Assembly: GCF_023055435.1 (NCBI RefSeq)
Contig: NW_025964223.1
Location: 41,044,001-41,108,000 of the forward strand
From: Haliotis rufescens
Lineage: Eukaryota
Length of the DNA stretch: 64,000 nucleotides
Reading direction: 5' to 3'
In this document: in pieces, positions 4,929-63,400 of the stretch
Layout of the letters: each line of letters opens with the position of its first letter
How positions within the stretch are numbered: position 1 is the first letter of the stretch
The notes under the pieces: generated by a model
What the model was told of the DNA's origin: nothing
Seen by the model: only the letters and a program-made list of their open reading frames with translations
Database searches by the model: none
Position numbers and translations under genes: made by a program

Positions 4929-7900
4929 CTAGGCGTAAATGTATGGATCATCTCCACTGACCGAGTTGACGTACGAAGGTACTTCACTTCTGTTTATGTG
5001 ACCGTAGCTATGTTCGTCACCGTCTTCACTTGCATTACGTTGTATTCCATTGTACATATTTCTTTCAACATCATGGCTGAGGCCAGAATATGTGTTGGTG
5101 GTGCCACTGGTGGGAATAAGGTCATCTTCTCCCTGGGATCCATCAGGGATGCTCTGCACACCATAATAAACTGACGTTTCAGGATTCGATGAATTACCGT
5201 GCGAGTTCCTGGATAGCCTGATTACCATGCTGCAGCAATAGACGTTTTGCATACGATCATTGAATAATAATTACAAGGTTGCATTTTGACTTCATTACCA
5301 AGTGCCATAATATCACACGTATAAATCAAACAGTTTGATGTACTTACATATATATGATGAGCGCCACTATGATGAGAACCAGGACACCACACACCACTGC
5401 TAAGGGTAAAACAATATTTCCATTGTCTGAAACGAGATACATGAAGCCTTTAACGTGAAGATTTCTGCTTTTGTCTGTGCCTTCATTGCACAACTTGGGC
5501 TTACAAACACACGAGCGCGCGCGTGTATACACACACACACACGTGCATGCACACTCTTACACGAAATTATTTCCATATTTCGTATAACAATCTCATTGGT
5601 TACCTGTGTGTGTTGATGACAGGGCTGTAGAGGTAAGGGATGTCATTGTGACGGTTGATCCCTGAGCAGTAGTATAGGTAGTTATTTCAGACAGTGTAGT
5701 GATGCCGTTGGATATCCGTAGCGTTGTGGCTACTGACGTAGTTAGTGAATCTGTATGGGAAATGAAACACAATGAGTGATTTCCTCTGTGGTTAGTATGC
5801 ATGGCCGTCGTAGGGATTCCGGAAGAAAATACATGAGGTTCCCAGAAACCGTCGCTGGTCTCAGGAGGCGATCAAATGAATCGGGGTGATTGTGTATCTA
5901 CGTACCCTGATGGCGTGGATCGTTGCTCACAAATAACAAATTGTCTGGTCCAGTTTCGATTTTTTACAAACCGCCATCGTATATATAGCTGCAATAATAG
6001 TACGGCAAACAAACAAACAGAGACCAAATCAAACTATTTGTCGACCTCTTAACGGAATAGGAACAATAGATAGGGATAGAAGTTGAGTTCTCGTTACTAA
6101 TTCAACATGGGACAAGTCGCCCTGTCATTTCCTTCAGTCAGGCTCTCTGATTACACCTTCTGGAGTTAGGCTGTACTGATGTTCTAGCATATTGTTCAGG
6201 GCAGTCTATGTCAGCTATTGCGTGTTCTAGTGATGAGATACAGACTCAGGGAAATTCAAGGTAATAACACTGCTGCCATAGACCACACTAGTCTTCTCAA
6301 ATGCGTGTCATCACAAATGTTCATACTCATACCCACACAAATATAACGGTAATCCAACTGATCACCGTTGAGAGGGTCATGAAACATCGTCATCAGGTGA
6401 CACTCACCCATAGAAGTCAAAGGTGTACTTGTTGTTGCTGCAGTGGTCAGTGTGTCCAAAGTACTTGGACTGGTTGCATCTTGTGAACGCGATGGCGCCT
6501 GTGTTGGCGTGGGTACTGGGGTGGTTGATGCTTCCAACGGTTGTCGCTCAGAAGTTATGTTCATTTTACCTGAAGCTGTGAACAATCATTTCTGAAGCAG
6601 TCTGTAGGTCCGAGTTCCGTTTGATTTGAAATAAGTGATGCGACTCCCGGACACTGGAGGAAACTAGCTGACCATAGAGTCGTAGGTCGTAGAGTTGTAT
6701 AATATATGATGAAACCTACTGCATACCAGTCAAGTCATAATATTTTCTTAGTATATTATGGAAAGTAGTTAAAAGGGGGTTTATTTTCATCATGGCTACA
6801 CTGTACTTTTCTTTTGATGGAACCAGCAGTTCTCGAGAGGCTGTCACAATTGTATTTTTCAATAAAATAAATTGAACAAATCAGAAACTATGTATTGTCA
6901 GGATAGATTGGTTCATAAAGGAATTTTATCATTAAAGTGATCACACTGGACTGACTGAAGGTAGATTGAAATAATTACATGTTTTCTCGGATAGCGAGTC
7001 AAAAGTCAAATCAAGACCGGCATCAGATTCTATTTGTTAACTTATTGCTAATTTGATGGTTATCATAGAAGGAGACACGTCAAAAGATAAATTTGATGTA
7101 TACTCTCATACATACCAGAAACACGTATCCATACATTTGATCCATTCTGATAATGGTTATCGTAGACTATTACTACTTCGGCAGCTGTTCCCCGTAATAA
7201 CCTGTTGTTTTGGATCAAGTTCACCCTTGTCCAGAGTTGATTCCCGTCACCTGAGATGTTAAGACTCCCTAACTTTATCCGCTGTTCTACCAATGTTACT
7301 TGTATATTCTCCCCTGTGATCCTAACAACACAGCTGCTGTTCACACCGACACTGTTAGGGAAGCCCGGGGAATGTAGGTACACCGACCCGTTTACTGTTG
7401 TGCTGACTGAACTACACATATCCATACTTTCTGAAACACAATGCATATAACAAGTAGAACAACTTACATGCTAGTATTCAAATTAGTGACATATTCTTTC
7501 ATAACAGGTCATATAAAGCAAATTGCTCCCATGTATTCTTGATTTCGTTTTGGCGCCCGGTTGATCAAGGCTGAAGCTGAAACACTCATGAATCGCTGGA
7601 AATGATATAGCATTATTACCAGGGTCACACTAAGGTCATGATGCAGGGGGCACTTGGCATGTAGTTCTAGTCAGTTGGCATGAGCGTCTAGTCAGGCTCT
7701 AGTCAGGCTCTAGTCAGGAGGTTTAATCAGTTTGCAGTATCCTTTGGTTGTTTATTACAAAACATATACTATAATTGATGGCAATGATGGTGAAAGATGT
7801 TATGAAAGCAGTCCAGTATTCGTACGCGCTTGTTGTTTTGTTATGTCATAAATCACAAACAGAAGTCGGTGCAATTAAACGCTTACTAGGTAACAAAATA

Positions 7901-8054
7901 TGGTACTCATACACGTGTAACCTTGACATGTCACGATGTATTTATGAATATTGTAACGAACAACATAATGATAAGAAAGATAGTTTTTTTATGTCAACTT
8001 CTTTATCATGAAGAACACAACATTTTCGGAGTAGATGCTTACTCCTTCATCAGG

Positions 8055-8091
<37 letters not shown>

Positions 8092-11000: not shown

Positions 11001-11468
11001 TGATCAATTTTGACCCAAATAGGCTTTCGTATAATACATAGTTTGAACTACTTGTATATTCATGCTGTTTGATACCCCTTTCTGTTTCCTAGATACATAG
11101 TACAGCAACACTGGTAAATGTAAATGCTTGTGCGCTGTTAAATTCAGTGACATCCAGGGGGTTGAACATTTGAGCTTTTGTATTGTTGTATACTTGTAAT
11201 TTCAGTCACAACAAATCACAGGTACCAAGATCATATGGCAACCGCTGTCGCAATTTCTGGGTCTTATTCAACGATTCATAAACAAACGAACAGTATTGCG
11301 ACTTTTATAATATTGAAATCTGATGAAAATACACATCGTAGTTGCCAAAATGAACAATGCAACCCATACTCAAGTAAACAAACCAAATGAACGTATATCT
11401 TTTTTTTACTCACCGCATACAGCCAGTAAGAAATAGACGCAAAGCACAAATGCTCTTTCAGCATGCAT
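4929..11468 (-). pseudogene. Receptor copy A: SUEL-lectin/CUB-like/mucin-stalk/TM/Tyr-tail receptor, frameshifted in the lectin exon
   Basis: GT-AG exons: 11468-11414 (signal MHAERAFVLCVYFLLAVCG), 10212-9896 (lectin, 317 nt = 300+17), 7430-7116 (CUB-like), 6575-6408 and 5750-5604 (T/S/P stalk), 5426-5348 (TM), 5229-4929 (tail). A 17-nt insertion at 10054-10070 causes a premature TGA; all other exons are open and in phase. Confidence 0.8.
10626..11031. mobile_element. Foldback MITE with ~27-bp TIRs, internal ~20-bp tandem repeats and a 6-bp TSD
   Basis: Termini tatgaaagcctattgaggtcaaaattga / tcaattttgacccaaataggctttcgta. TAATAC lies on both sides (10620-10625, 11032-11037). The arms are built of ttcgttataacgg units in opposite orientation. 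Absent from intron 1 of B, C and D. Confidence 0.85.
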
Positions 11469-14859: not shown

Positions 14860-15375
14860 TTGATATTAGATGTTAACATATGGACCATCTTCACTGACAG
14901 TAAACATAGGCAGGCCCTTCACAACTGGTTATACGCCCGTAGCTACATGTATGTTCGTCACCATCGTCACTTGCATCACAATGTATTCCATCGTAGACAT
15001 GTGTCATCATAATGACTGAGGCCAGAGTTGGTGGTGTCACAGGTGGGAATTAGGTCATCTTGTCCTTTTGATCTTTTAGGGATCCTTTGCATATCATGAA
15101 CTGACGTGTAAGTATGTGATGAATTACCGTGCGAGTTTCCCCTGGATAGATTGTTTACCCTGCTGCAGTAATAAACGTTTTACATACCGTAATTAGTTAA
15201 TATTAGTGATATTACCGAAATATTGCTTAAAACGGCATAAAATGATTCTTATTCACTCACTCATATATAACTCGACCAGTTTCATGTACTTGTAGTTTCA
15301 TGATGAGCACCACTATGATGAGACCCAGGACACGACACGCCACTGCTAATGGTAACACAATACGTCTAGTGTCTT
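14860..15375 (-). pseudogene. Relic copy F: TM and tail exons only of the receptor family
   Basis: TM-like DTRRIVLPLAVACRVLGLIIVVLIM (~15372-15295) with the donor site lost. Tail-like RVNNLSRGNSHGNSSHT...QDDLIPT has the first Tyr deleted and a frameshift. No upstream exons are recognisable. Confidence 0.75.
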
Positions 15376-16630: not shown

Positions 16631-17334
16631 ACCTTAAGACAGACTTGCGGCAGTCGTAGCGCTGAGGTTGTTTTGTACAATGGTACCCTGGTCGGCAGGG
16701 AGTGTGAGTGGGTTGTCCATGTTAAGACTGCGGCATGCTATATCTGTTGACTAGCACAAAAAAACCTCGCATTACAAGCAGTCACACGCACTTGCATAAA
16801 CTTGCATAAACGTCCCTATATATATCCCAAAAAATATCGGATGATGAACAAAGATAATTATTGGAATATGAATATTTTATTTCGGAAGGAAAGTAAAAAC
16901 GCATAATCACATATGTTCAAAGCTGAGAGTAATAATGATTCATAACAAAGCAGATAAACTGAATATATTTATCAAAAAATGATGATTGATCAGTTGATAA
17001 ATGAAATATTGTGAAATGTTATGGAATGAGGATATAACTAGAATGTGTATAATATGGAACAAATATGGAACTCCTTTTCAAACTTAAGAGAAATAATTAC
17101 GAAAATAAAGTTTATATGTATACGTTGGCCTTTATAGAAACACTGGTTAGTCTCACGCTGAATATACAGACCACTATTTTGTTTCAAAGATATGTGAAAA
17201 AGCATAACCAGATATGTTCATAGCTTAGAATAATATTAATTCATAACGAAGTAGGTAAACTAAATTTAATTATCAAGCAAGCTGATTGATCAGGTGATAA
17301 ACGAATCTTTGAAAAATGGGGTGGAATGAGGATT

Positions 17335-18607
17335 TACCACAAAGCCATTGAAAACACAATAGCTTTTGATGAGCGTACTTGTGAAAAGAGCAATTGCCCC
17401 AAACCTTTTCAAACATCATGATAGTGGTGTGAGAGATATGTGTCCCCTTGTGACAATTCGGGTTCGAACCACCTTGGAGCAATGAATCAGAAAGTGAAAA
17501 GCGCAACTGTGCACACTGCACCGAAACACAATCACTGTTGCTTGACACATGCTGCACGTGAAACGCTAGATCCCAGGTTCTTTAAAAGCACCTACGAAAA
17601 TGGTCATCCGACACTTGTTCAGTATGCCAAGACTCGACCAAGCCAGCAGGAACCAAGCGATCAGAATGCTGCAAGAAGGGGCAACTCAAGTGATCGTCGC
17701 CAGACGTGTTAACGTCCATCCATGCAAGATAACTCGACTGTGGCATCGTTTCAACCTTTTGTACCTTTTGGTACTTTTGGGACCCGTCAACGCCGCTGTG
17801 TTTTGGAAAGGTGTCGCTTTGGAGGAGGCTGTACAATGGTATGGGATGTACCATCAGTTTCCGGTCCCACAGACGGTGGTTATCCAAGGCATTATGTGAA
17901 TAATACCCTTCGCCCAGCACTATTGCCATTACTGGCTCAACATGGCGCCCTACATCATCTTGTCTTCCAGCATGACAATGCACGTCCACAAGGTTCACGG
18001 GAGACTTTCTGACCAGGAACAACATCCTGCCATGTCACCTGACATGAATCCAATTGAACACTTGTAGGACGAGCTTTGACAGAGGGTTCCAACTCAACAG
18101 CAACCGCCTCAGACAGTGGCAGAGTTGACACAGTCCCCACAACATCAGGGGCGGTCGGATCGCCTGGTGGTTAAAGCGTTCGCTCGTCACGCCGAAGACC
18201 CGGGTCCGATTCCCGACATGGGTACAATGTGAAGCCCTTTCCTTGTGTCCCCGTCCTGATATTGCTGGAATATTGCTAATAGCGGCGTAAAACCATACGC
18301 ACCCACCCCCACAACATCACTGGCAGACCATTCAACAACGTTTCCTGAGTTGTCAGTCCATGCCTCGGCGACTTCAGGCATTCGTCAGTGGATATGGTGG
18401 ACATGCCCGCTATTGATCCTCGGTGGTCCCGGCTTCGTTCTGAGCCTCTGTGTCATCATCCACGGGCGTGTTTCTTACGGACTTTATTGCTAACATTTCA
18501 TGTAATGGGTGTGTTTGTCATTTTGGTTGGTTTCATTTGGTTTTCTTTCACTGTAATAAAATACACACATTCTGAACACTGAAGTGCGTTTTCAATGGCT
18601 TTGAGTA
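17335..18607 (+). mobile_element. Tc1-like DNA transposon, internally deleted
   Basis: Inverted termini cacaaagccattgaaaacacaat / agtgcgttttcaatggctttgag-TA. Transposase remnants: MPRLDQASRNQAIRMLQEG (HTH), RFGGGCTMVW, FQHDNARP and SPDMNPIEHL. Confidence 0.9.
18148..18306 (+). mobile_element. tRNA-derived SINE nested in the Tc1 element
   Basis: tRNA-like head ggggcggtcggatcgcctggtggttaaagcg...gggtccgattccc, tail gctggaatattgctaatagcggcgtaaaacc, and TSD ccccacaacatca on both sides. Confidence 0.9.
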
Positions 18608-18756
18608 TATATGGAACATGATATAGAGACATAATTTACAACATAAACTTTACATGTTATACTTGATAAGTGCAAATACGCACTGACTGATCTTATACCT
18701 GCGAATAATGGTACTATATGCTGCAACAATCTGAAACACTAGCTTGTGTGTTGTCT

Positions 18757-21700
18757 CTAGGCGTTAATGTATGGATCATCTCCACTGACCGAGTTGACGT
18801 AGGAAGGTCCTTCACTTCTGTTTATGTGACCGTAGCTATGCTCTTCACCGTCTTCACTTGCATTACGTTGTATTACATTGTAGATATTTCTTTCAACATC
18901 ATGGCTGAGGCCAGAATATGTTTTGGTGGTTCCACTGGTGGGAATAAGGTCATCTTCTCCCTGGGATCCATTAGGGATGCTCCGCACACCATAATGAACT
19001 GACGTTTCAGTATTAGATGAATTACCGTGCGAGTTCCTGGATAGCTTGTTTACCATGCTGCAGCAATAGACGTTTTGCATACGATCATTGTATAATATTT
19101 ACAAGGTTTCATATTGACTTCATAGCCAAGTGCCATAATATCACACGTATAAATCAAACAGTTTGATGTACTTACATATATATGATCAGCGCCACGATGA
19201 TGAGACCCATGATACCACACACCACTGCTAAGGGTAAAACAATACTTCCATTGTCTGAAACGAGATACATGAAGTCTTTAACGTAAAAATTTCTGCTTTT
19301 GTCTGTGCCTTCATTGCACAACTTTGGCTTACAAACACACGAGTGCGTGCGTGTATACACACACACGTGAATGCACACTCTTAACCGAAATTATTTCCAT
19401 ATTTCGTATAACAATGTCATTGTTTGTCGTTATTACATGTACATATAGATACCCGTGTGTGTTGATGACAGGGGTGTAGAGGTCAGGGATTTCATTGTGT
19501 CGGTTGATCCCGGAGCAGTAGTATAGGTAGTTCTTTCAGACAGTGTAGTGATGCCGTTGGATATCCATAGCGTTGTGGCTATTGACGTAGTTAGTGAATC
19601 TGTATGGGAAATGAAACACAATGAGTGATTTCCTCTGTGGTTAGTATGCATGGCCGTCGTGGGGATTCCTGAAAATAATACATGAGGTTCCCAGAAACCG
19701 TCGCTGGTCTTAAGAGGCGTCCAAATGGATCGGGGTGGTCAGGCTCGGTGACTTGGTTGATTGTGTATCTACGTACCCTGATGGCGTGGATCGTTGCTAA
19801 CAAATAACAATCACTGGATTGTCTGGTCCAGTTTCGATTATTTACAAACCGCCATCGTATAGCTGCAATAATAGTACGGCAAACAAACACATTGAGACCA
19901 AGTCAAACTATTTTCAGTCAGGCTCTCTGATTACACCTTCTGGAGTTGTGCTGTACTGATGTTATAGCATATTGTACAGGACAGTCTATGTAAGCTATTG
20001 CATGTTCAAGTAATTAGATACAGACTCAGGAAAACTCAAGGTAATAACACTGTTGCCATGGACCACACTAGTCTTCTCAAATGCGTGTCATCACAAATGT
20101 TGATACTCATACCCACACAAATATAATGGTAATCCAACTGATCACCGTTGACCAGGGTCATGAATCATCGTCATCAGGTGACACTCACCCATGGATGTCA
20201 AAGGTGTACTTGTTGTTGCTGCAGTGGTCAGTGTGTCCAAAGTACTTGGACTGGTTGTACCTTGTGAACGTGATGGCGCCTGTGGCGTGGGTGATGGGGT
20301 GGTTGATGCTTCCAATGTTTGTCGCCTAGAAGTTATGTTCATTTGACCTGAAGCTGTGAACAATCATTTCTGTAGCAGTCTCTAGGTTCGAGTTCCATGT
20401 TGATCTTTAATAAGTGAGGCAACTTCTGGACACGGGGGAAACTAGCTGACCATAGAGTCGTAGGTCATGTCATTTATTTACTGAGGAACTTGTTACCATA
20501 CAAATAACTGTGAATACAGTATAATATATGTTGAAACCTACTGCATACCAGTCAAGTCATCATATTTTCTTAGTATATTACGGAAGATTGTTAAAAGATG
20601 GTTTCTTTTCATCATGGCTACACTGTACTTTTCTTTTGATGGAACCAGCTGTTCTGGAGGGGCTGTCACAATTGTATTTTTCAATATAATAAATTTAACA
20701 AAACTATGTATATTTTATTGTCAGGATAGATTGGTTCATGAAAGGAATTTTATCATCGAAGTGATCGCACTGGACTAGATTGAAATAATTACGCGTTTTC
20801 TCGGAAAGCGAGGCAAAATTCTAATCAAGACCGGCAGATTCTATTTGTTAATTTATTGATAAATTGATGGTTATCAAATAAGGAGAAACGTCAAAAGATA
20901 AATTTGATGTATACTCTCATACATACCAGAAACACGTATCCATACATCTGACCAAGTCTGATCCTGGTTATCGTAGACTATTACTATTTCGGCAGCTTGT
21001 CCCGGCAACACCCTGTTGTACTCGTCTACTATCACGCTTGTCCATAGTTGTTTCCCGTCACCTGAGATGTTAAGACTCCCTGTCGTTATCCTCTCTTCTA
21101 TCAATATTACTTGTATATCCTGCCCTGTGATCCTAACAACACAGCTGCCGTTCACACCGACACTGCCAGGGAATCCCGGAGTATGGAGGTACACCGACCC
21201 GTTTACTGTTGTTCTGCCATTACCTGAACTACACATATCCATACTACCTGAAACACAATGCATATGACAAGTAGAACAACTTACATGTTAGTATTCAAAT
21301 TAGTGACATATTGTATCATAACAGGTCATATAAAGCAAATTGCTCCCATGTTGCTTGATTTCGTTTTGTCGCCCGGTTGATCAAGGCTGAAGCTGAAACA
21401 CACATGAATCACTGGAAATGGTATAGCATTATTACCAGGGCCACACTGAGGTCATGATGCAGGGGACAGTTGGCATGTAGTTCTAGTCAGTTGGCATGAG
21501 CGTCTAGTCAGGCCCTAGTCAGGAAGTTTAATCAGTTTTCAGTATCCTTTAGGTGGTAATTACAAAACGTATGCTATAATTGATGGCAATTGTGGTGAAA
21601 GATGTTATGAGAGCAGTCAAGTATTCGTACGCGCTTGTTTTTTTGTTATGTCATGAATCGGGAACAGAAGTCGGTGCAATTAAACACTTACTAGGTATCA

Positions 21701-21855
21701 TACACGTGTAACCTTGACATGTCAAGATGTATTAATGAATATTGTAACGAACAATATTTCGTTCGCAAGACTAAACACAGTTATGAGGATATCTGTATAC
21801 CGGTACTACTACCGGTACTACTACTACTACTACCACTACTGATACTACTATATAT

Positions 21856-21893
<38 letters not shown>

Positions 21894-22004
21894 GTAGCAG
21901 TAGTAGTACCAGTAATAATGATAAGGAAGAGAATTTATGGATGTCATCTGTTTTATCACGAGGAACACAATTTTTTCGGAGTATAAGCTTACTCCTTCAT
22001 CAGG

Positions 22005-22051
<47 letters not shown>

Positions 22052-25000
22052 CTGTGTAATTCTCTGAAAAATTATGCCTGTTACCATATGTGTATCTCAT
22101 ACGTACATGTAACTATGGAAGAAACTAGAGTTGTGATGATGCGAAATAATCGACACAATAGATGCACAAAGCCACAATTAAATATGTGTCTGATTACGAT
22201 AAGATCGATATTGTCCCATGTGACTTAAGTTTCATATCCTAAAAGCCTGACACGATGGATGTTTTAAATGTAATTACATTTTTGCCTTAATCAGTTGTGA
22301 AATCGTGGTGGTGGCCTCAAGGAACTACACGCTCACCTCAAGATGTGAAGTCACGGACGACGTCAGATCAATATATACAATCCAAACATGCATAACCAGT
22401 AGCAGTTATAGAATGGTGCATGATACGATGAACCGCGAATCCTTGATAACACAAGTGTTAATTCTCTACAGAAAATATACACTTGTTTGTTCCGTTTACT
22501 GACTTGCAATACATGTGCGTGTACTGTATGTCCGTTACATGCTGTCATGTTCCGATCTCCAAGCAGACACTCCATCCACAAGACCATGGAGGTAGTCCAT
22601 CATAAGACTCATCAGTAAGTCTTGCAATGACATCAACAGGCGAACATACCATGTTGCAATGACATCAACAGGATAACATACAAATTGAATGTTGCAATGA
22701 ACAAGCCAGCATACCATGTTAGTCTTACATTATTCCTGCAGTGTCTCGCAGCAAAATTAACAAATTATCAGATGTTTGTTTGTTTGTTTGTTGTTTAACG
22801 CCGCATCCGATATCAGCAATATTCTATCTACATGAGGGCGATCTGCAAATAGTCTGAGACAGACAATCCAACGATTTACATCGTGAGCATCGGCCAATGC
22901 AATTGAGATACGATGGCCTGAAATCAACCAAGTCACTGATCAGTAAGCCTGGCCACTTGATCCTGTTAGTCACCGCTAAATTGCTGAAGACCAATTCTAA
23001 TGATTAAAGGTTCTTAGGATGCGACTTCAGACTAGAGGTGGGGCGGTCGGGTAGCCTAGTGGTTTAAGCGTTCGCTCGTCACGCCGAAGACCCGGGTTCG
23101 ATTCCCGACTTGGGTACAATGTGTGAAGCCCATCTCTGGTGTCCCCAGCCGTGATATTGCTGGAATATTGCTAAAAGCGGCGTAAAACCATACTCACTCA
23201 CTCACTCAGGCTAGAGGTTGCAAAAACAACAATGCACGTCATCACCCTTATATGTCGTTATACGTTTACGCAATGATTAATCTCACTTTAATCTCACTTA
23301 AACTAGTAGTACTCCGTCGCATCAGACTAATAGAGCCAAGTAGTATTTTTTCTGATTTTAATCAAACCTAAATTTAACACATATATTTGTAAAAAAATGT
23401 TGACAATAATATTTTTGTGCATTATGCTAAAGCATGGTGTGCGCATGAATGCACTGTATCCGATAATCGGGAAAAGCTAAATAATGTTCCAGCTTTACAA
23501 CATCCTGTACATTATAATGGAATCTTGATCGGGCAAACCAGTGCACGATAACACGAGCAACGTGCCAAGATGTAGAGTAGGATGACAGTTGGTTAGACAG
23601 AACAACACTTTGTAACCATCATATCATTGCGATTTGTATGGGTGTTAGTGTGTTCTACTCCAGGAACCACCATGGAGGAAAATACATGCTTCAATGAATG
23701 CATTGTGCGATGTGCAGACAATAACAAGACTTGCAAAGAAAGAGGTTAGATGTCATGTACCACCACATCGACTGTACATGAACGGCAAACACCTACTGTG
23801 ACCAAATCAACCTTTGATAGAAAACGGAAAATAACATGGTTTTTGAACGTACAGAACATTCGCATCTGTATTTATGATTATTGGGTTTTATATCTAAAAT
23901 CATGCATGTGGGTTTAATTGAATCAGAAAGTGGTATTACTGAAAACAACGCATGTTGTTTGCATCGAGCAAGAACTAAACGAAGTGTCACCTTTGATACA
24001 GTTGTACTTTACTTCAGCAGCAGCATCTGTAAAGTTACAGTTTGTTTGGGGTGTTGCGGTTATGGCTTCACGGCATGACTGTTTCCCATTACAGTTGACG
24101 ATCAGGCCATTCTGGTTGCTGGTGTGAACCTTACTACATGCCTGTGCTGATTTCAGACGACATGTCGCGGCGTCTCCATTCCCATACGCCTCTTGCTCGA
24201 CATGTATCCATTCATCGGCAGAACACTGAAGCTGTACTGTGAAGGTTCCCGCCAACCCCTCTATACATCTGCTCCCAGTTCTTGTGTCACCTTTGAATAT
24301 AAGGTAACTCGTTCACTGTCAAATATACATCGCAAAATATAATCGAAATGTTTTTACGTCAGTCTCAGGTAAATACCACATTGAAACAAACATGCTGCAA
24401 TCAACATTGATCTGGAAGTGACAGGTGCATCAATGTATTTATGACAATTGTCAATGTAATATTGTGTGTCGAGAATGAGACAATACTGAGGAAATCATGA
24501 TGTTTACATATGTAACTGTTGAGTCGTTTATTATCGCATTCCATTTGTCACTAGACATTGCGTGTATTTATGTATTTTGCTGACAATTAAATTATATAAA
24601 CGAATCCCGTGACATTTTACAGAAGTGATGTCATGACTGACATTTATCCGTCTAAGTCTGATATAGGATATTGAATTAATATTGTAGTAATGGTCTCACA
24701 TCTTTTAGAAATAATAAAATTGTATTTGCGTAAATAAAATTATTGATGCAAAATTCCATATCTGATAGACTGTTTTGAAAGACATGTAACTTTTTGCTGT
24801 TTGATACCATCTTATGTTTCCTTGACAAATCGTGTAGCAACACCAGAAAGTGTAAATGCAAGTGCGCTGTTACATTCAGTAACATCAAGGGAGTTGAACA
24901 TTTAAGCTGTTGTGTTGTTGCATGTGTGTACTTTTAGTCACAACAAATCGCAAGTACCAGGATCAAATGGTACCATCTGTTAGTACTCAAACATTAGTAA

Positions 25001-25186
25001 GCAAACACGTCCGGGAGTGACACTTTTAACATATTGAACTCTGATGAAAATTCAGTAGCCAACACGAACAATCTTGGTACACGAACTGTAGTACACAAAC
25101 CAATGGAAAGTCTATCTGTCTATTTACTCACCGTGTACAGCCAATAAGAAATGCACACAAGCCATAAACACTCTTTCAGTATGCAT
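18757..25186 (-). CDS. Receptor copy B: type I membrane protein (signal, SUEL/Gal-lectin fold, CUB-like, mucin-like stalk, TM, ITAM-like tail), ~455 aa
   Basis: Exons 25186-25132, 24290-23991, 21247-20927, 20353-20189, 19599-19453, 19254-19176, 19057-18757 sum to 1368 nt. All are GT-AG with phases 1,1,1,1,1,2 and no internal stop. Lectin: 8 Cys with CIEG..LQC..WIHV..AYG..CNGKQSC..EVKYNC. CUB-like: C..GSVYLHTPGFP..NGSCVVRI. TM: IVLPLAVVCGIMGLIIVALIIYIMV. Confidence 0.85.
21803..22050. repeat. (ACT)n and (AAT)n microsatellites; orthologous (AAT)n at 8057-8105 and 55548-55594
   Basis: Directly visible. Confidence 0.95.
23040..23207 (+). mobile_element. tRNA-derived SINE, full length
   Basis: A/B boxes (tagcctagtgg, ggttcgattcc), (CACT)n tail, TSD tcag(g/a)ctagaggt. 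Empty site in copy D at ~56515. Confidence 0.9.
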
Positions 25187-25671
25187 AGCTGTTAAATGTC
25201 AGTCATCAGAAGTACACTACATCTTTTCTGTATGTCCGTTGATACACAACAGGTCGACTCTATCCAGGCATTACATGTCGTAAAACGGTTGTGTTCCTAT
25301 TCTGTATGTAGCAAGTCCTCTCTGCGAACGTCCCACACCTTGAATCACAGACAATGTAAACAGCTTCACTTCTGAACACTTCAAACCTATTAGCACGTAA
25401 TCACTCTCCTGGGACATCTTAAATCTGTCATTGTGTCCCCATGAATCTTTCGGGTATACTGGAACATCTAACACCATAGTCTTACACATATCACAAGACA
25501 AATGGTAAACTGAACAAACACAATCAACGAAATGTCATAACCAACACAGCGACAATATGTACAAACCTCACAAGGTAGCTTAGAGCTATTGATAGCATAA
25601 TGCATTAATAAAACGTCCCTGGTGGCCCACGAACAGGGAAGTTGACTGCAAACATGTGTGTTTAATGTGGC

Positions 25672-29089: not shown

Positions 29090-32000
29090 CTAGGTGTTAA
29101 CATATAGACCAACTCCACTTCCAGAGTTAACATAGGCAGGTCCTTGTCTGCTGGGAATGCGACCATAGCTATGTTCGTCACCATCTTCACTGGCATTACG
29201 TTGCATTCCATCGTAGACATTCGTCTCATTGTAATGGCTGAGGCCAGAATATGTGTTGGTGGTGCCACTGGTGCCATTGGTGGGAGTAAGGTCATCTTGT
29301 CCCTGGGATCCACTGGGGATGGTTTGCATACCAAGATGAGTTGACGTTTCAGTATAATTCGATGCATCACCGTGCATATCCGTCCTGGATAGCTTGTTTA
29401 CCATGCTGCAGGGACAAACGTTTTGTGTACTGTTATTGTATAATTTTCACTATCATAAGGTTATATTTGACTTCTCTCAAAGTGTCCTATAGTTTCTCAT
29501 GAAACAGTTACTTACATATATATGATGAGCGCCACTATGATGAGAACCAGGACACCGCACACCACTGCTAAGGGTAACACAATACTTCCATTGTCTGAAA
29601 CGGAATACGTGAAGCCTTTAACTTGAAGATTCATACTGGTCTCGCTGCGTTACTTGCGCAACACGGACTTACACGCACACGCACGTGTGCGGAAACCAAT
29701 ACACACGCATACACATACTTACTCACAATTATTTTAATATTTCTCGTAAAACAATGTCATTGGTTGCCGTTAATGCATGTACATATAGATACCTGTGTCA
29801 GAGAATCATATAACCAGTTTAAAGACCTGTTATATATATGTTCATAGAACGTCAGATCAAACACGAACAATTCAAAAACAAGGGACATAACTGGTGGGAT
29901 GCGAAATTTGTTGTTTGTTGTTTCAAGCCGCACTCAGCAGTATTACACTCTGTCAGCTATATGACGGCGGTCTGTAAATAATCGAGTCTGGACCAGATAG
30001 CCCAGTGATTGACATCATGTGTATCAATTCACGCTATTGGGATACGATGTCATGCATCAACCAAGTCAGCGAGCCTGACCGCCCGATCTCATTACTCGCC
30101 TCTAACGACAAACATAGTCGCTTTTTATTAAAGCATGGAAGTACTATAAACAACTGTATTTTCAGAAATATACACGCATCTATTTTAGAGTTCTAGATTC
30201 AATAACAGATGTGATGATAAACACACGTGAAGATGTATCAGAATTATATATAGACATAACACATGAAAAGGCTGTAACAGATATTCAGGTATGCAAAGTG
30301 GAAAGGATCCAGGTTTCAGTGGAATAGCTATAGAATTCTTTAAATATGCACCAAAGATATGCATATCCAAAAACAGCGTTTATTTTGGGGTTAAATTGCC
30401 TCTTCACAAGAAAGGTGATGTTGATAAACCTGAGAACTATAGGCCAATAACCTTATTAGATGTATCAAAGTTTGTATTTCTTGCTATGAAAATGCGATGT
30501 AAACAACTAAGTTTACTGTAAAGAGCAGAATGGCGCTTTTACGAAACAAACATCAATGTATCATTAATGCATGTCATCACAAATGACATACTCATACCCA
30601 CACAAATATAATGATAATCAAACTGAACACCGTTGACCAGGGTCATGAAACATCGTCATCAGGTAACACTCACCCACAGAAGTCATAGGTGTACTTGTTG
30701 TTGCTGCAGTGGTCAGTGTGTCAAAAGTACTTGGACTGGTTGTACCTCGTGAACGTGATGGCGCCTGTGGCGTGGGTACTGGGGTGGTTGACACATCCAA
30801 TGTTTGTCGCTCAGAAGTTATGTTCATTTGACCTGAAGCTGTGAACAATCATTTCTGTACGTAGCAGTCTCTATGTTCGAGATCCATGTTGATCTTAAAA
30901 AAGTGATGCGACTCCTGGGCATTGGGGGAAACTAGCTGACCATAGAGCCGTGAGTAATTTAATCATTTTTTGAGGAACTTGTTACCATACGATGAACTGT
31001 GAATACAGTATAATATATGCTGAAACCTAATGTATACCAGTCACGTCACATGTCATCAAATTAGATGTTTGTGGCTTCACTGCACCTTTCTTTTGATGGA
31101 ACCAACAAGTCTGGAGAGGCGGTCGCTATTGTATTTTTCAATATAGTCCATTGAACAAATCAGAAGCTATATTTATTTTACTGTCAGGATAGATTGGTTC
31201 ATGAAAGGAACTTCATCAATAAAAGGGATCACACTAGACTGACTGAATGTAGATTGTAATAATTATATATATTTTCTCGGAAAGCGAGGCACAATTCAAT
31301 TCACGATCGGCATCAGATTTGATTTGCTAATTGATTGATAAATTGATAGTTATCATATCAGGAGACACGTCAAAAGATAAATTTGATTTATAACCTCACA
31401 CATACCATCAACACGTATCCATAGATTTGCCCCAGCCTGATCATGGTTGTCATAGACTATTACTACTTCGGCAGCTGTTTCCGGCAATACCCTGTTGTAT
31501 TGGTCCACGTTCACGCTTTCCCAGAGTTGTTTACCGTCACCTGAGATGTTAACTAGCCCTTGTCTCATCCGCTCTTCTACCAATGTTACTCGTATATTCA
31601 TTCCTTTGATCCTAACAGCACAGCGTCTGTTCACAGCGACACTGTTAGGGTAGCCCGGGGAATTGAGGTACAAGGGCGCCCCTACTGTTGTTCTGACAGT
31701 ACCTGAACTACACATATCCATACTACCTGAAACACAATGCATATAACATGTTGAAGAACGTATATGTTTTGATTCAAATTAGCGACATATTGTATGGTTC
31801 ATATCAAACAAATTGCTTTCAAACAAACGTGAATTTGTGCTCGCGTCCATTTGATCAAGGCTGAAATGAACTTGAAGCTCAAATCAAGAACCAACATTCA
31901 TAAATGTTATAGCATTATTACCAGGGAAAGGCGTTTCCATCTTACTGGTAGCGCCAAGGTCATGATCCAGTTGACAGTTGGCATGCACTTTTAGTTGGTC

Positions 32001-51100: not shown

Positions 51101-51247
51101 AGACGACTATTTTATTTCAAAGGAATGTGAAAAAACTTAGCATAATATTAATTAATAAACAAAGCAGGTAAACTAAATATAATTATCAAGCAAGCTGATT
51201 GATCAGGTGATAAACGAAACTTTGAAAAATCTGGTGGAATGGGGATT

Positions 51248-52332
51248 TACCACAAAGCCATTGAAAACACAATAGCTTTTGATGAGCGTACTTGTGAAAA
51301 GAGCAATTCCCTGAAACCTTTTCAAACATCATGAGATTTCTGTGAGAGATATGTGTCCCCTTGTGTCAGTTCGGGTTCGAACCACCTTGGAGCAATGAAT
51401 CAGAAAGAGAAACGCAACTGTGCACACTGCACCGAAACACAATCACTGCTGCTGGACACATGCTGCACGTGGAAAGCTAGATCCCAGGTTCTTTAAAAGC
51501 ACACACGAAAATGGTCATCCGTCACTTGTTCAATATGCCAAGACTCGACCAAGCCAGCAGGAACCAAGCGATCAGAATGCTGCAAGAAGGGGCAACTCAA
51601 GTGATTGTCGCCAGACATGTTAACGTCCATCCATGCAAGATAACTCGACTGCTGCATCCTTTCAACCATTTTTTACCTTTTGGTACTTTTGGGACCCGTC
51701 AACGCCGCTGTGTTTTGGAAAGGTGTCGCTTTGGAGGAGGCGGTACAATGGTATGGGAAGTACCATCAATTGTCGTTCCCACAGTCGGTGGTTATCCAAG
51801 GCAACCTCAATGTTCCAGATTATGTGAAAAATACCCTTCGCCTAGCACTATTGCCATTACTGGCTCAACATGGCGCCCTACACAAGCGTGTCTTCCAGCA
51901 TGACAATGCACGTCCACGAGGTTCACGGGAGACTTTCTGAACAGGAACAACATCCTGCCATGTCACCTGACATGAATCCAATTGAACACTTATGGGACGA
52001 GCTTTGACACCAACCGCCTCAGACAGTAGCAGAGTTGACACAGTCCCTACAACATCAGGGGCGGTCAACAACGTTGTCAGTCCATGCCTCGGCGACTTCA
52101 GGATTACGTCAGTGTACATGGTGGACATACCTGTTATTGATCCCCGGTGGTCCCGGCTACGTTCTGAGCCTCTGTGACGTCATCCAACGGGCATGTTTCT
52201 TACGGACTTTATTGCTTACATTTCATGTGATGGGTGTGTTTGTCATTTTGGTTGGTTTCATTTGGTTTTCTTTCACTGTAATAAAATACGCACCTTCTGA
52301 ACACTGAAGTGCGTTTTCAATGGCTTTGAGTA
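51248..52332 (+). mobile_element. Tc1-like transposon, duplicate of the 17.3-kb copy
   Basis: Same TIRs, same position relative to the receptor stop codon and same transposase remnants (RFGGGGTMVW, FQHDNARP, SPDMNPIEHLWD). Confidence 0.9.
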
Positions 52333-60482: not shown

Positions 60483-63400
60483 TTATTTGTTATACTTTAT
60501 ATGTACATATTCCCCCTTATAAAGAAGACTGGCTGATCTCAAAGTGATTATAGAGCTACAAGAGCCTAAAGCACAAGCTTGTGTGCTGTCTCTAGGTGTT
60601 AACATATGGACCAACTCCACTTCCAGAGTTAACATAGGAAGGTTCTTGTCTACTGGTAATGCGACCGTAGCTATGTTCGTCACCATCGTCACTGGCATTA
60701 CGTTGCATTCCATCGTAGACATTCGTCTCATTGTAATGGCTGAGGCCAGAATATGTGTTGGTGGTGCCACTGGTGCCACTGATGGGAGTAAGGTCATTTG
60801 TCCCTGGGATCCACTGGGGATGGTTTGCATACCAAGATGAGTTGACGTTTCAGTATAATTAGATGTGTCACCGTGCATATCCGTCCTGGATAGCTTGTTT
60901 ACCATGCTGCAGGGACAAACGTTTAGTGTACTGTTATTGTATAATTTTCACTATCATAAGGTTATATTTTGACTTCTCTCGAAGTGTCATATAGTTTCTC
61001 ATGAAACAGTTACTTACATATATATGATGAGCGCCATGCCCACTATGATGAGAACCAGGACACCACACACCACTGCTAAGGGTAACACAATACTTCCATT
61101 GTCTGAAACGGAATACGTGAAGACTTTAACTTGAAGATTTATACTGGTCTCTCTGCGTTACATGCGCAACACGGACTTACACGCACACTTACTCACAATT
61201 ATTTTAATATTTCTCGTAAAACAATGTCATTGGTTGCCGTTATTGCATGTACATATAGATAGCTGTGTCAGAGAATCATATAACCAGTTTCAAGGCCTGT
61301 TATTTATATGTTCATAGAACGTCAGATCAAACACGAACAATTAAAAAACTAGGGACATAACTGGTTGGATGCGAAATTGTTGTTTGTTGTTTCAAGCCGT
61401 ATTACGCCGTATTTCACTCTGTCAGCTATATGACGGCGGTCTGTAAATAATCGAGTCTGGACCAGATAGCCCAGTGATTGACATCATGCGTATCAATTCA
61501 CGCTATTGGGATACGATGTCATGCATCAACCAAGTCAGCGAGCCTGACCACTCCATCCCGTTAGTCGCCTCTTACGACAAACATAGTCGCCTTTTACTAA
61601 AGCATGGAAGTACTATAAACAACTGTATTATCAGAAATATACACGCATCTATTCTAGAGTTCTAGATTCAATAACAGATGTGATGATAAACACAAGTAAA
61701 GATGTATTAGAATTATATATAGACATAACGCATGAAGAGGATGTAACAGATATTCAGGTATGCAAAGTGGAAAGGCTCCAGGCTTCAGTGGTATAGCTAT
61801 AGAATTCTTTAAATATGCACCAAAGGTATGCATATCCAAAATAGTGGTCATTTGGGGGTTAATTTGCCTCTTCACAAGAAAGGTGTTGTTAATAAACCTG
61901 AGAACTATAGGCCAATAACCTTGTTAGAAGTATCAAAGTTTGTATTTCTTGCTATGAAAATGCGATGTAAACAACTAAGTTTACTGTAAAGAGCAAAATG
62001 GCGCTATTACGAAACAAACATCAATGTATCATCAATGCATGTCATCACAAATGACATACTCATACCCACATTCAGTCAGGCTCTCTGATCAGACCTTCTG
62101 GAGAAGTGCTGTACTGATGTTTTAACGTATTCTACAGGACAGTCTATTTAAACTATTACATGTTCTAGTAATTAGATACAGACAGGAAAACTCAAGGTAA
62201 TAACACTGTTGCCATCGACCATACTAGTCTTCTCAAATGCGTGTCATCACAAACGTTCATACTCATACCCACACAAATATAATGATAATCAAACTGAACA
62301 CCGTTGACCGGGGTCATGAAACATCGTCATCAAGTGACACTCACCTTGTGTACCTTGTGGACCTTGTGGACCTTGTGTACTTTGTGTACCTTGTGGACCT
62401 TGTGAACGTGATGGCGCCTGTGTTGGCGTGGGTGAAGGGGTGGTTGATGCATCCCATGTTTGTCTCTTGAAAGTTATGTTCATTTGACCTGAAGCTGTGA
62501 ACAATCATTTCTGTTCATACTCATGCAGGTAATGACACCACAATAATATGTTAAATTATATTATTCTTGCATGTTCATATATGTTCTAGTAATTAGATAT
62601 CAGTATGAAAACTCAAGGAAATAACACTGTAGCCAGTAACCACACTTGTCAAATTCATGTTATCACAAACGTTCATACTCATACCCACATAAATATAATG
62701 GTAATCCAACTGATCACCGTTGACCAGGGTCATGAAACATCGTTATCAGGTGACGCTCACCCATAGAAGTCAAAGGCGTAGTTGCTGTTGCTGCAGTGAT
62801 CGTCAGTGTGTCCAAAGTACTCGGTCTGGTTGTACCTTGTGAACGTGATGGCTGCTGTGTTGGCGTGGGTGATAGGGTGGTTGATACATCCAATGTTTGT
62901 CGCCTAGAAGTTATGTTCATTTGACCTGAAGCTGTGAACAATCATTTCTGTAGCAGTCTCTAGGTTCGAGTTCCATATTGATCTTAAAAAGGTGATGCGA
63001 CTCCTGGGCATTGGGGGAAAGTAGATGACCATTGGGCCGTAGGTAATTTAATCAGTTTTTGAGGAACTTGTTACCATACGATGAACTGTGAATACAGTAA
63101 AATATATGCTGAAACCTAATCCATACCAGTCACGTCAAATGTCATCAAATTAGATGTTTGTGGCTTCACTGCACCTTTCTTTTGATTGAACCAACATGTC
63201 TGGAGAGGCGGTCGCAATTGTATTTTTCAATATAATACATTGAACAAATCAGAAGCTTTATTTATTTTACTGTCAGGATAGATTGGTTCATGAAAGGAAC
63301 TTCATCAATAAAAGGGATCACACTAGACTGACTGAAGGTAGATTGTAATAATTATATATATTTTCTCGGAAAGCGAGGCAAAATTCAATTCACGATCGGC

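What the first reader, a model, noticed from the sequence alone, without database searches (positions are those of the whole stretch)
18871..18918. ITAM-spaced tyrosine pair and SH2-type docking sites conserved in the tails
Seen: B and D YSGL-SHDVERNI-YNVI, A YSGL-SHDVERNM-YNGI, C YSGL-SHYNETNV-YDGM. These are followed by YGHI/YGRI and YVN, then a terminal YIN (B, D), YVN (C) or YIY (A). The five Tyr positions are kept between B-type and C-type tails although the surrounding residues diverge. Established: ITAM = YxxL/I-x6-8-YxxL/I (Syk/ZAP70/Shark), pYxN binds Grb2 and pYxxM binds PI3K p85. Inference: these are activating, possibly phagocytic receptors, and C-type copies may signal differently.
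Basis: partly seen in the sequence, partly recalled or inferred. Interest (0 to 1): 0.75.

Follow-up and report, generated by a model that had tools for sequence, protein, structure and literature searches.

The report
Abalone lectin-CUB receptor tyrosine-motif tail
The marked stretch encodes part of the inner tail of an abalone-only family of lectin-headed surface receptors, and its conserved tyrosine motifs look like docking sites of the type immune receptors use, though their function is untested.

Summary
Window 18871-18918 (minus strand) encodes YSGLSHDVERNIYNVI in the last exon of gene B. Gene B has seven exons: signal peptide, SUEL-like lectin domain, CUB fold, mucin stalk, TM helix and a 99-residue tail. 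Spliced contigs from public runs join the TM exon to the tail exon as predicted.

The family is known only from abalones (Haliotis), as uncharacterised RefSeq proteins. At least 20 tail copies lie in about 212 kb of this genome.

The whole tail drifts almost neutrally among recent copies (pN/pS 0.82), but the motif positions do not. Only 1 of 10 varies against 45 of 99 columns (P=0.017). Four tyrosines and both YxN asparagines are among 12 invariant columns of 44 across four species and two tail types.

Its first tyrosine is missing in all 8 H. rubra and H. asinina tails. The genus-wide core is Yxx[I/L/M]-x12-YxxI plus two YxN.

Src-family, SHP2-like, PLC-gamma-like and CSK-like genes were matched in the genome (p85-like by eye only). 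No Syk or Shark gene was located, in an incomplete search. "Activating, phagocytic" remains inference.

The scan noted sister clusters of this family before (s1-810253, s1-811071).

The parts
18871..18918 (-). The finding: codons for YSGLSHDVERNIYNVI (Y47 to I62 of tail B), two YxxL/I motifs 8 residues apart
18823..18882 (-). Second, overlapping pair YNVI-x12-YGHI (Y59 to I78). Both tyrosines are kept in all 25 tails compared, across four Haliotis species
18793..18801 (-). YVN (Y86). Tyr and Asn are invariant in 25 of 25 tails. Grb2/Drk-type pYxN consensus
18763..18771 (-). C-terminal YIN (Y96). Tyr in 25 of 25 tails, Asn in 24 of 25 (copy A has YIY)
18757..19057 (-). Exon 7 of gene B: cytoplasmic tail (99 codons plus one base of a split codon) and TAG stop
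   Evidence: spliced contigs join 19057 to 19176
19176..19254 (-). Exon 6 of gene B: transmembrane helix (DNGSIVLPLAVVCGIMGLIIVALIIY), donor GTAAGT
19453..19599 (-). Exon 5: Ser/Thr-rich stalk, second part
20189..20353 (-). Exon 4: Ser/Thr/Pro-rich mucin-like stalk, first part
20927..21247 (-). Exon 3: CUB-fold domain
   Evidence: the fold was assigned on the RefSeq paralogue P0026, with an Atlas lead
23991..24290 (-). Exon 2: SUEL/rhamnose-binding-lectin-like domain, below Pfam's cut-off
25132..25186 (-). Exon 1: start codon and signal peptide (MHTERVFMACVHFLLAVHG), donor GTGAGT
4932..5228 (-). Tail exon of copy A (ITAM-like segment 5043-5090; terminal YIY)
29093..29404 (-). Tail exon of copy C (segment 29204-29251; second motif YDGM). 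Identical to the tail of RefSeq XP_048240589.1
52485..52781 (-). Tail exon of copy D (segment 52596-52643)
60595..60923 (-). C-type tail exon with a frameshift upstream of the motifs (copy C'). RefSeq XP_048240587.1 reads the shifted frame
14903..15373 (-). Degenerate TM plus tail remnant: stop codon, frame break and first Tyr deleted

Best explanation
The stretch is part of the cytoplasmic tail of a single-pass type-I receptor. The receptor is built of a signal peptide, a SUEL-like lectin domain, a CUB domain, a mucin stalk, a TM helix and a roughly 100-residue tail predicted without secondary structure. The tail most likely works as a phosphotyrosine docking platform. Clustering of the lectin/CUB head by a ligand would let a Src-family kinase phosphorylate the tail. 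The chained YxxL/I motifs would then offer bidentate sites for a tandem-SH2 protein. These are Y47-x8-Y59, a canonical ITAM spacing found in H. rufescens and H. cracherodii, and Y59-x12-Y75, the older pair found across the genus. The candidate partners are a Syk/Shark-type kinase or SHP2. The two invariant YxN sites (Y86, Y96) would dock a Grb2/Drk-type adaptor. Shown here: the gene structure, the transcription and splicing of the family, the membrane topology logic, the motif pattern and its selective conservation. Inferred: phosphorylation, the partners, and the activating or phagocytic outcome.
For: Gene model: seven exons with GT-AG borders, summing to 1365 nt or 455 codons in frame. Spliced contigs join 19057 to 19176 (4 contigs in 3 of 4 runs) and 19256 to 19455 (3 contigs in 3 of 4 runs). 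One 1160-nt contig spans exons 4-7. Domains: SUEL_Lectin covers 1-80 of 80 profile positions at E 1e-4 to 2e-3, below the cut-off. The top 21 structure matches are all CUB domains, Z 8.4-10.4, rmsd 2.2-2.9 over about 100 residues. Conservation in 25 tails from 4 species and 2 tail types: Y2, Y3, Y4 and Y5 in 25 of 25; Asn of YxN in 25 of 25 and 24 of 25; Y2+3 is I, L or M in 25 of 25. In a deep set of 8 lineages, 12 of 44 columns are invariant and include all 4 Tyr (P=0.0036) and all 6 Tyr/Asn positions (P=1.3e-4). Among 13 recent tails, 45 of 99 columns vary but only 1 of 10 motif positions does (P=0.017), although pN/pS for the whole tail is 0.82. The 11 intact tails of this genome keep 55 of 55 motif tyrosines, while 7 of 8 broken or split copies have lost at least one. 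The type-2 tail is homologous (BLASTP E 6e-7) and keeps YSNL-x8-YERL. A Src-family kinase gene, an SHP2-like gene and two PLC-gamma-like genes are present in the genome by best PDB match; two p85-like genes were read by eye only. Mollusc precedent: oyster CgIgR with a classical ITAM co-precipitates with CgSyk (PMC6994640, passages read).
Against: No experiment of any kind bears on phosphorylation or binding. Y47, the first ITAM tyrosine, is missing in 8 of 8 H. rubra and H. asinina tails. The x8 pair is therefore not needed for whatever the family does across the genus. In type-2 tails the third motif is not YxxI, so neither pair is universal. Copy C has Met at the second +3 position. No Syk or Shark gene was found among the SH2 loci I could examine. 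There is no acidic residue at -3 of Y47. Overall dN/dS of 0.5-1.2 in all exons shows weak constraint. The runs laid are only guessed to be RNA, and their contigs are 93-99% like copy B, so they show that the family is expressed, not necessarily this copy. The tissue of expression is unknown. The structure model is poor outside the CUB domain and TM helix (mean pLDDT 42), so tail disorder is only suggested.
Confidence: 0.5

Rival explanations
1. The tail is a phosphotyrosine adaptor-type tail that does not use an ITAM-Syk module. The functional core would be the two invariant YxN sites (Grb2/Drk) plus single YxxI sites for Src-family, SHP2 or PLC-gamma SH2 domains, as in transmembrane adaptor proteins. 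The x8 spacing in H. rufescens would be incidental.
For: The only genus-wide invariant motif elements are Y2, Y3 and the two YxN sites. Y1 is absent in H. rubra and H. asinina. Type-2 tails multiply the YxN-type unit (repeats of SY[A/I]NSGG). No Syk or Shark was located, while Src-family and SHP2-like genes were matched and p85-like genes were seen by eye. The language-model neighbours of the TM plus tail include the SCIMP and GAPT adaptors and the MUC1 tail, all at scores below 0.9, so these are leads only.
Against: YSxL-x8-Yxx(L/I) is kept in two tail types that share only 46% identity over 50 residues. It is also kept in all 14 intact H. rufescens and H. cracherodii type-1 tails. In shuffles such a pair is rare (0.62%).
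Confidence: 0.25
2. The YxxL/I motifs are tyrosine-based sorting signals (YxxPhi, bound unphosphorylated by the AP-2 mu subunit). The protein would then be an endocytic or scavenger lectin receptor, not a signalling receptor.
For: YSGL, YNVI and YGHI all fit YxxPhi, which is established knowledge of sorting signals (recalled). A lectin/CUB head on a mucin stalk suits a cargo receptor.
Against: One YxxPhi motif is enough for sorting. This reading does not explain the fixed x8 and x12 spacing, the acidic run before Y75, or the invariance of two YxN sites whose +3 residues (S, A or T) are not hydrophobic. The two roles are not mutually exclusive.
Confidence: 0.15
3. The pattern has no function. 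The tail is a Tyr-, Asn-, Ser- and Gly-rich low-complexity segment of a young, fast-drifting gene family, and the motifs are kept by recency and chance.
For: pN/pS is 0.82 among the 10 B-type tails, and dS is about equal to intron divergence (0.058 against 0.056). Many copies in the cluster are broken. The family is confined to one genus: 5 hits among 1.84 billion representative proteins.
Against: Motif positions are significantly less variable than the rest (P=0.017; P=0.0036; P=1.3e-4). They persist across four species and two old tail types. They decay only in broken copies.
Confidence: 0.1

Closest known systems
Vertebrate ITAM-bearing immunoreceptor chains (FcR gamma, CD3, Ig-alpha/beta, DAP12)
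   Same: Yxx(L/I)-x6-12-Yxx(L/I) in a short cytoplasmic tail predicted without secondary structure (consensus read in PMC3528668 and PMC3026934). A Src-family kinase gene is present in the genome.
   Different: There is no sequence homology. Here the motif sits on the ligand-binding chain itself, and the TM helix has no charged residue for pairing with an adaptor. Three YxxL/I motifs are chained, followed by two YxN. The first tyrosine is not conserved across the genus. Syk was not located.
Drosophila Draper / CED-1 family (Src42A-Draper-Shark axis)
   Same: An invertebrate receptor that carries its own ITAM together with a second kind of tyrosine motif. Alternative isoforms swap the signalling tail (Draper-I ITAM against Draper-II ITIM; PMC4503800, passages read). 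In this family, RefSeq isoforms X1 and X3 of LOC124137135 likewise carry different TM plus tail modules.
   Different: The ectodomain is unrelated (EGF repeats in Draper, a SUEL-like lectin plus CUB here). The accompanying motif is YxN in this tail and NPxY in Draper.
Oyster CgIgR (Crassostrea gigas)
   Same: A mollusc membrane receptor with a 'classical ITAM' in its tail. It was shown by co-immunoprecipitation and RNAi to act with CgSyk and ERK in haemocytes (PMC6994640, passages read). It is the nearest functional precedent in the phylum.
   Different: CgIgR has five Ig domains, not a lectin plus CUB head. No sequence relation was tested or expected. That case has experiments and this one has none.
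Dectin-1 / CLEC-2 hemITAM lectin receptors
   Same: A carbohydrate-recognition head wired directly to a YxxL-type Syk-docking tail. A single YxxL per chain suffices when the receptor dimerises (PMC3026934, passages read). That could explain how H. rubra and H. asinina tails work without Y1.
   Different: Those are type-II C-type lectins with an N-terminal tail. This is a type-I protein with a SUEL-like lectin domain and a C-terminal tail.
Transmembrane adaptor proteins with pYxN sites (SCIMP, GAPT)
   Same: A short TM protein whose tail is a string of tyrosine docking motifs, including Grb2-type YxN. These were the nearest named neighbours by language-model features (scores 0.76-0.82, a lead only).
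   Different: Those adaptors have almost no ectodomain. This protein has a ligand-binding head of about 330 residues. No homology was shown.

Membership tests
[quoted passage not shown] | Two Yxx(L/I) motifs separated by 6-8 (strict) or 6-12 (broad) residues | tested here: met
   Copies A, B and D have YSGL-x8-YN[VG]I (strict) and YN[VG]I-x12-YGHI (broad). In copy C the middle motif is YDGM, so neither pair fits the letter of the rule there.
[quoted passage not shown] | Lies in the cytoplasmic part of a membrane protein | tested here: met
   N-terminal signal peptide, Ser/Thr-rich stalk, a 25-residue hydrophobic helix, then a K/R-containing start of the tail. The TM-to-tail splice is seen in contigs. 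The TM helix is modelled at pLDDT 62-77.
[quoted passage not shown] | Both tyrosines and both +3 residues are conserved in orthologues | tested here: inconclusive
   The x8 pair is kept in 17 of 25 tails: all H. rufescens and H. cracherodii type-1 and type-2 tails. It is lost in 8 of 8 H. rubra and H. asinina tails. The x12 pair is kept in 22 of 22 type-1 tails of four species but not in 3 of 3 type-2 tails.
[quoted passage not shown] | Acidic residue shortly before the first tyrosine (original D/E-x-x-Y form; recalled, and not required by the modern consensus) | tested here: not met
   The residues before Y47 are T-T-K/N-T. Y75 does have E at -3 and an acidic run (SEDGEEHS) before it.
[quoted passage not shown] | A Syk/ZAP-70/Shark-type kinase (tandem SH2 plus kinase) exists in the same organism | tested here: inconclusive
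   There were 58 SH2 matches in the genome. The tandem or kinase-linked loci I examined were, by best PDB match, CSK-like, SHP2-like, PLC-gamma-like (two), JAK/TYK2-like, Src-family, and a BTK/Src/Abl-like array. By eye only, I read two further loci as p85-like and one as Tec-like. A transcriptome paper lists SYK among abalone genes (PMC8428104, passage read).
[quoted passage not shown] | Phosphorylated by Src-family kinases, with the doubly phosphorylated form binding tandem SH2 domains | not testable with these tools
   This needs biochemistry. Only the presence of a Src-family kinase gene and Ile/Val/Met at -1 of Y59 can be stated.
ITIM / ITSM (inhibitory or switch motifs) | (S/I/V/L)-x-Y-x-x-(I/V/L), or T-x-Y-x-x-(V/I) (consensus recalled) | tested here: not met
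   The -2 residues are K/N (Y47), N (Y59) and H (Y75) in the tails of this window. None fits.
Grb2/Drk SH2 docking site | Y-x-N | tested here: met
   Y86-V/A/I/F-N in 25 of 25 tails; Y96-I/V-N in 24 of 25 (copy A has YIY). Binding was not tested, and a Grb2/Drk gene was not sought.
PI3K p85 SH2 docking site | Y-x-x-M | tested here: inconclusive
   Only C-type tails have YDGM. One copy is intact (window 29093-29404) and two are broken. p85-like genes were seen by eye, with no database test.
SUEL / rhamnose-binding lectin domain (Pfam PF02140) | Score above Pfam's gathering cut-off of 31.4 bits | tested here: not met
   Scores of 18.6-23 bits, E 1e-4 to 2.4e-3, though 1-80 of 80 profile positions are aligned. 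Some family members carry a precomputed PF02140 label. The structure model of this domain failed (pLDDT below 50). I therefore call it SUEL-like, not a member.
CUB domain | CUB beta-sandwich fold | tested here: met
   Model residues 120-226 of P0026 (pLDDT 50-84) match 21 CUB structures at Z 8.4-10.4, and the next row (TMPRSS6) scores 7.4. The Atlas neighbours are CUB clusters at 0.84-0.88, a lead only. Pfam's CUB model gave no hit.

The most novel reading that the evidence does not exclude
Abalones evolved their own germline-encoded, tandemly expanded receptor system. One fast-changing lectin-CUB head is wired to interchangeable tyrosine tails. One is an ITAM-plus-YxN tail (this cluster of 20 or more copies). 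A second is an ITAM plus YxN-repeat tail. A third is a long acidic tail with repeated NxxY-like motifs. At least some genes appear to switch tails by alternative splicing. If so, ITAM-type bidentate signalling was assembled independently on a lectin receptor in a gastropod, and the x12 pair is the ancestral working unit from which the canonical x8 ITAM arose or was lost.
Probability: 0.25. Interest if true: 0.75.

Novelty: new member of a known kind. Interest (0 to 1): 0.45.

Why it matters
ITAM signalling is the core switch of vertebrate antigen and Fc receptors. Outside vertebrates only a few receptors (Draper, oyster CgIgR) have been tied to it. This is a genus-restricted, many-copy lectin-CUB receptor family whose only clearly constrained tail positions are tyrosine docking motifs. 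It would give a tractable case of how such signalling tails are gained, duplicated, swapped and lost. It would also name candidate pattern-recognition or self/non-self receptors in a farmed and endangered group of molluscs. As it stands this is a sequence-level prediction on genes already deposited as 'uncharacterized'.

Tried and rejected
Tail-only homology searches. A profile of 14 tails against 1.84 billion representative proteins gave only 5 hits, all Haliotis. Word-based searches with the type-1 and type-2 tail regions gave 5 and 3 proteins, all from H. rufescens or H. cracherodii. No relatives outside abalones were found, so deep conservation could not be tested.

Pfam on the tail, TM and stalk exons gave nothing.

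The whole-protein structure model was poor (mean pLDDT 42). It served only for the CUB domain and the TM helix. I do not claim a fold for the lectin domain from it.

The Syk hunt used many searches and ended without a Syk or Shark locus. I do not conclude absence.

ITIM and ITSM readings were rejected on the -2 residues. A hemITAM reading of the acidic run before Y75 was considered but rests on recall only.

Using A/B/D identity as evidence of constraint was rejected after dN/dS. The 3'UTR distances are unreliable because of misalignments and insertions, and I did not use them.

Literature: no paper in the searched library describes this family.

Full report
WHAT IS AT THE COORDINATES. Window 18871-18918 read on the minus strand encodes YSGLSHDVERNIYNVI. 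The exon starts after a TGCAG acceptor. The exon upstream (19176-19254) encodes a hydrophobic helix (DNGSIVLPLAVVCGIMGLIIVALIIY) and ends at a GTAAGT donor. The split codon (AT + C) gives Ile, so the helix runs straight into MVNKLSRNSH....

The window also holds a frameshifted C-type copy (60595-60923) and a degenerate remnant (14903-15373).

THE GENE. Mapping the RefSeq paralogue P0026 on the window and reading the junctions gives seven exons for gene B, all with GT-AG borders: 25186-25132 (signal peptide), 24290-23991, 21247-20927, 20353-20189, 19599-19453, 19254-19176 and 19057-18760. Together they make 1365 nt, or 455 codons in frame. I summed only the lengths and did not join the exons. 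All full-length analyses used RefSeq models returned by the tools.

Exon 2 matches Pfam SUEL_Lectin over the whole profile but below the cut-off (23 bits against 31.4).

Exon 3 is a CUB fold. In a model of P0026 (poor overall at mean pLDDT 42, but 50-84 over residues 120-235), the top 21 PDB matches are all CUB domains at Z 8.4-10.4. The next row (TMPRSS6) scores 7.4. The Atlas neighbours agree, as a lead only.

Exons 4-5 are Ser/Thr/Pro-rich. The TM helix has no charged residue. The tail is modelled without secondary structure at pLDDT 23-32, which fits disorder but proves little with 25 sequences in the alignment.

TRANSCRIPTION. Contigs from four public runs (kind only guessed as RNA) were laid on 18700-24400. 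They skip 19058-19175 (ends CT..AC on the plus strand, which is GT..AG on the minus strand) in 4 contigs of 3 of the 4 runs. They skip about 198 nt between exons 5 and 6 in 3 contigs of 3 of the 4 runs. One 1160-nt contig covers exons 4, 5, 6 and 7 in order.

The exon 5/6 joint is reported two bases off the canonical site. I attribute this to a one-letter difference between copies.

The contigs are 93-99% like copy B and come from coded organisms A and C. They therefore show that the family is spliced as predicted, not that copy B itself is expressed. Of the 22 listed differences inside the tail exon, none falls in a codon of Y47, Y59, Y75, Y86 or Y96, and one changes Y22 to Phe. Fifty-seven further difference rows for the laid stretch were not shown, so this is not a claim of absence.

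THE FAMILY. The tail has 20 matches in the window's genome. All are on the minus strand of one contig within about 212 kb. Ten are intact B-type, one is intact C-type, and the rest carry stops, frame breaks or insertions.

A profile of 14 tails found only 5 proteins among 1.84 billion representatives. A full-length search found 39 proteins. All are from Haliotis rufescens, H. cracherodii, H. rubra or H. asinina. None has a characterised function: they are named 'uncharacterized' or carry automatic '-like' names. RefSeq XP_048240589.1 (H. rufescens) has exactly the tail of copy C, and P0030 matches this genome at 100%. The genome is therefore red abalone or something indistinguishable from it.

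The same head is combined with at least three tail types:
- Type 1 is the tail of this finding.
- Type 2 reads ...YSNLVMYDRSNNYERL..., followed by repeats of a SY[A/I]NSGG unit. Three copies lie 6 Mb away on the same contig.
- Type 3 is a long acidic tail with repeated tyrosine motifs.
RefSeq isoforms X1 and X3 of one gene carry type-3 and type-2 modules respectively.

IS THE MOTIF MORE THAN CHANCE? Shuffling tail B 200,000 times gave a strict ITAM in 0.62% of shuffles, a broad one in 1.4%, a chain of three YxxL/I in 0.026%, and strict ITAM plus two or more YxN in 0.076%. With thousands of membrane tails in a genome, that alone proves nothing.

Identity among A, B and D also proves nothing. 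Across 45 pairs of the 10 B-type tails, mean dN is 0.047, dS 0.058 and intron divergence 0.056, with pooled pN/pS 0.82. Pairs within the window give dN/dS of 0.5-1.25 in tail, lectin and CUB exons alike.

The signal is site-specific:
- Among 13 recent tails (10 H. rufescens B-type, 3 H. cracherodii), 45 of 99 columns vary but only 1 of the 10 motif positions does (Asn98 to Tyr in copy A). The hypergeometric P is 0.017.
- In a deep set of eight lineages (B, C, three H. rubra, one H. asinina, two type-2), over the 44 columns present in all, 12 are invariant. These include all four tyrosines (P=0.0036) and both YxN asparagines as well (P=1.3e-4).
- The 11 intact tails of this genome keep 55 of 55 motif tyrosines. 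Seven of the 8 distinct broken or split copies have lost at least one. I infer at least four independent events: the Y1 deletion shared by three copies, Y4 to His shared by three, and Y1 to His plus a stop at Y5 in one.

These tests treat related sequences as independent, so the P values are rough.

WHICH PAIR IS THE CONSERVED ONE? In 25 aligned tails, Y2, Y3, Y4 and Y5 are present in 25 of 25. Asn of Y4xN is present in 25 of 25 and Asn of Y5xN in 24 of 25. Y2+3 is I (21), L (3) or M (1). Y3+3 is I in all 22 type-1 tails but not in the 3 type-2 tails.

Y1 is present in 17 tails: all H. rufescens and H. cracherodii type-1 and type-2 tails. It is absent in 8: seven H. rubra or H. asinina tails lack a 35-residue segment, and H. 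rubra P0002 has Asn there.

The type-2 tail is a true homologue (BLASTP E 6e-7, 46% over 50 residues). It has the same eight-residue spacer, and BLAST and MAFFT differ only in where they put a one-residue gap. The simplest reading is that YSxL-x8-Yxx(L/I) is old in the family and was lost in some lineages. I could not root this. I also could not check whether the H. rubra and H. asinina deletion is in the DNA or in the gene models.

The genus-wide core of type-1 tails is Yxx[I/L/M]-x12-YxxI plus two YxN. A 12-residue spacer is still inside the broad ITAM definition, Yxx(L/I)x6-12Yxx(L/I) (PMC3528668 and PMC3026934, passages read).

PARTNERS IN THE GENOME. Pfam SH2 gave 58 matches. Pfam PK_Tyr_Ser-Thr listed 150 of 151 matches, with only 143 of 882 candidates scored.

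By best PDB match, the loci I examined are:
- two adjacent CSK-like SH2 exons;
- an SHP2/PTPN11-like tandem SH2;
- two PLC-gamma-like genes;
- a JAK/TYK2-like kinase;
- a Src-family kinase;
- a tandem array of six or more SH2-kinase genes whose kinase is BTK/Src/Abl-like.

By eye only, I also read two p85-like genes and one Tec-like SH2.

No SH2-SH2-kinase gene of the Syk/Shark type turned up. This point is open, not negative.

From the literature: oyster CgSyk exists and co-precipitates with the ITAM-bearing CgIgR (PMC6994640, passages read). A hybrid-abalone transcriptome paper lists SYK among its genes (PMC8428104, passage read). The Drosophila Src42A-Draper-Shark axis is the classic invertebrate case, with tail-swapping isoforms (PMC4503800, passages read).

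VERDICT. The tail is best read as a phosphotyrosine docking platform on a lectin-CUB receptor. It has an ITAM-type bidentate site and two Grb2-type sites (confidence 0.5).

The main rival keeps the docking idea but drops Syk (0.25). The others are sorting signals (0.15) and no function (0.1).

ITIM and ITSM do not fit. 'Activating' and 'phagocytic' are untested. The claim that C-type copies signal through PI3K rests on a single intact copy.

The genes are already in RefSeq as uncharacterised proteins, and I found no paper on them. The scan had already noted sister clusters of this family in the same genome (s1-810253, s1-811071) and this cluster as a whole (s1-818162). I saw their type-2 and type-3 tails independently through.

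I file the finding as a new member of a known kind, the tyrosine-motif (ITAM-like) receptors of invertebrates, with moderate interest.

Noticed in passing
window 4932-11468 and 23991-25534: RefSeq model P0029 ('putative GPI-anchored protein pfl2', H. rufescens) begins with an ORF at about 25274-25534 and the lectin exon of copy B. It then continues with the CUB, stalk, TM and tail exons of copy A, about 13-20 kb downstream. Copy A's own lectin exon matches in two pieces that are out of frame with each other (10076-10222 and 9894-10055). The model looks like a chimera across two tandem copies, or a read-through transcript.
   Followed up: partly
window 19655-20036 and 22902-23283: Two intronic stretches of gene B collect contig depths of 1e4 to 1e6 in all four runs laid, with many back-joints and loose ends. 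They are probably very abundant short interspersed repeats.
   Followed up: no
proteins P0023, P0032, P0033, P0035-P0038, P0040, P0041 (family members at other loci): A third tail type of 250-340 residues is very acidic. It has 3-5 repeats of motifs such as ENDxYDGG and MVDNxLYDKF, that is N-x-x-Y, reminiscent of NPxY/PTB sites. RefSeq isoforms X1 and X3 of LOC124137135 share one head but carry type-3 or type-2 TM plus tail modules.
   Followed up: partly
G000:C112:40.06-40.25 Mb: A tandem array of at least six genes, each with an SH2 C-terminal half followed within 2-3 kb by tyrosine-kinase exons. The one kinase exon tested is closest to BTK/Src/Abl-type kinases. This is an expanded cytoplasmic tyrosine-kinase family in the same genome as the expanded tyrosine-tail receptors.
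   Followed up: partly
window 17582-18156: Between the degenerate copy and copy B lie ORFs with a transposase-like look (a '...QHDNARP...' stretch, which I recall as typical of Tc1/mariner elements). The same stretch recurs before copy D (16827-18156 against 50762-52066, 90% identical).
   Followed up: no
window 60595-60923; RefSeq XP_048240587.1 (P0005): The C-type copy at the right end of the window has a frameshift inside the tail exon. The RefSeq protein for it follows the shifted frame and so lacks all tyrosine motifs, although the motif codons are still intact in the old frame.
   Followed up: partly
G000:C445:41113559-41188635 (loci L013, L015, L017): A further tail subtype (YSGLRH[HY]DDTNVYDGI ... 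VYGFM ... PSH[VI]N) has the tail exon split by an insertion of about 140 nt or more. It has His in place of the fourth tyrosine, and two of the three copies carry TGA stops. It is unclear whether any is functional.
   Followed up: no
G000:C112:48.43-48.52 Mb; G000:C79:26.43 and 26.53 Mb; G000:C1:61.697-61.701 Mb: Several SH2 signalling genes occur as close pairs: two p85-like (read by eye), two PLC-gamma-like, and two CSK-like SH2 exons 3.7 kb apart. This suggests local duplications of phosphotyrosine-signalling genes.
   Followed up: no
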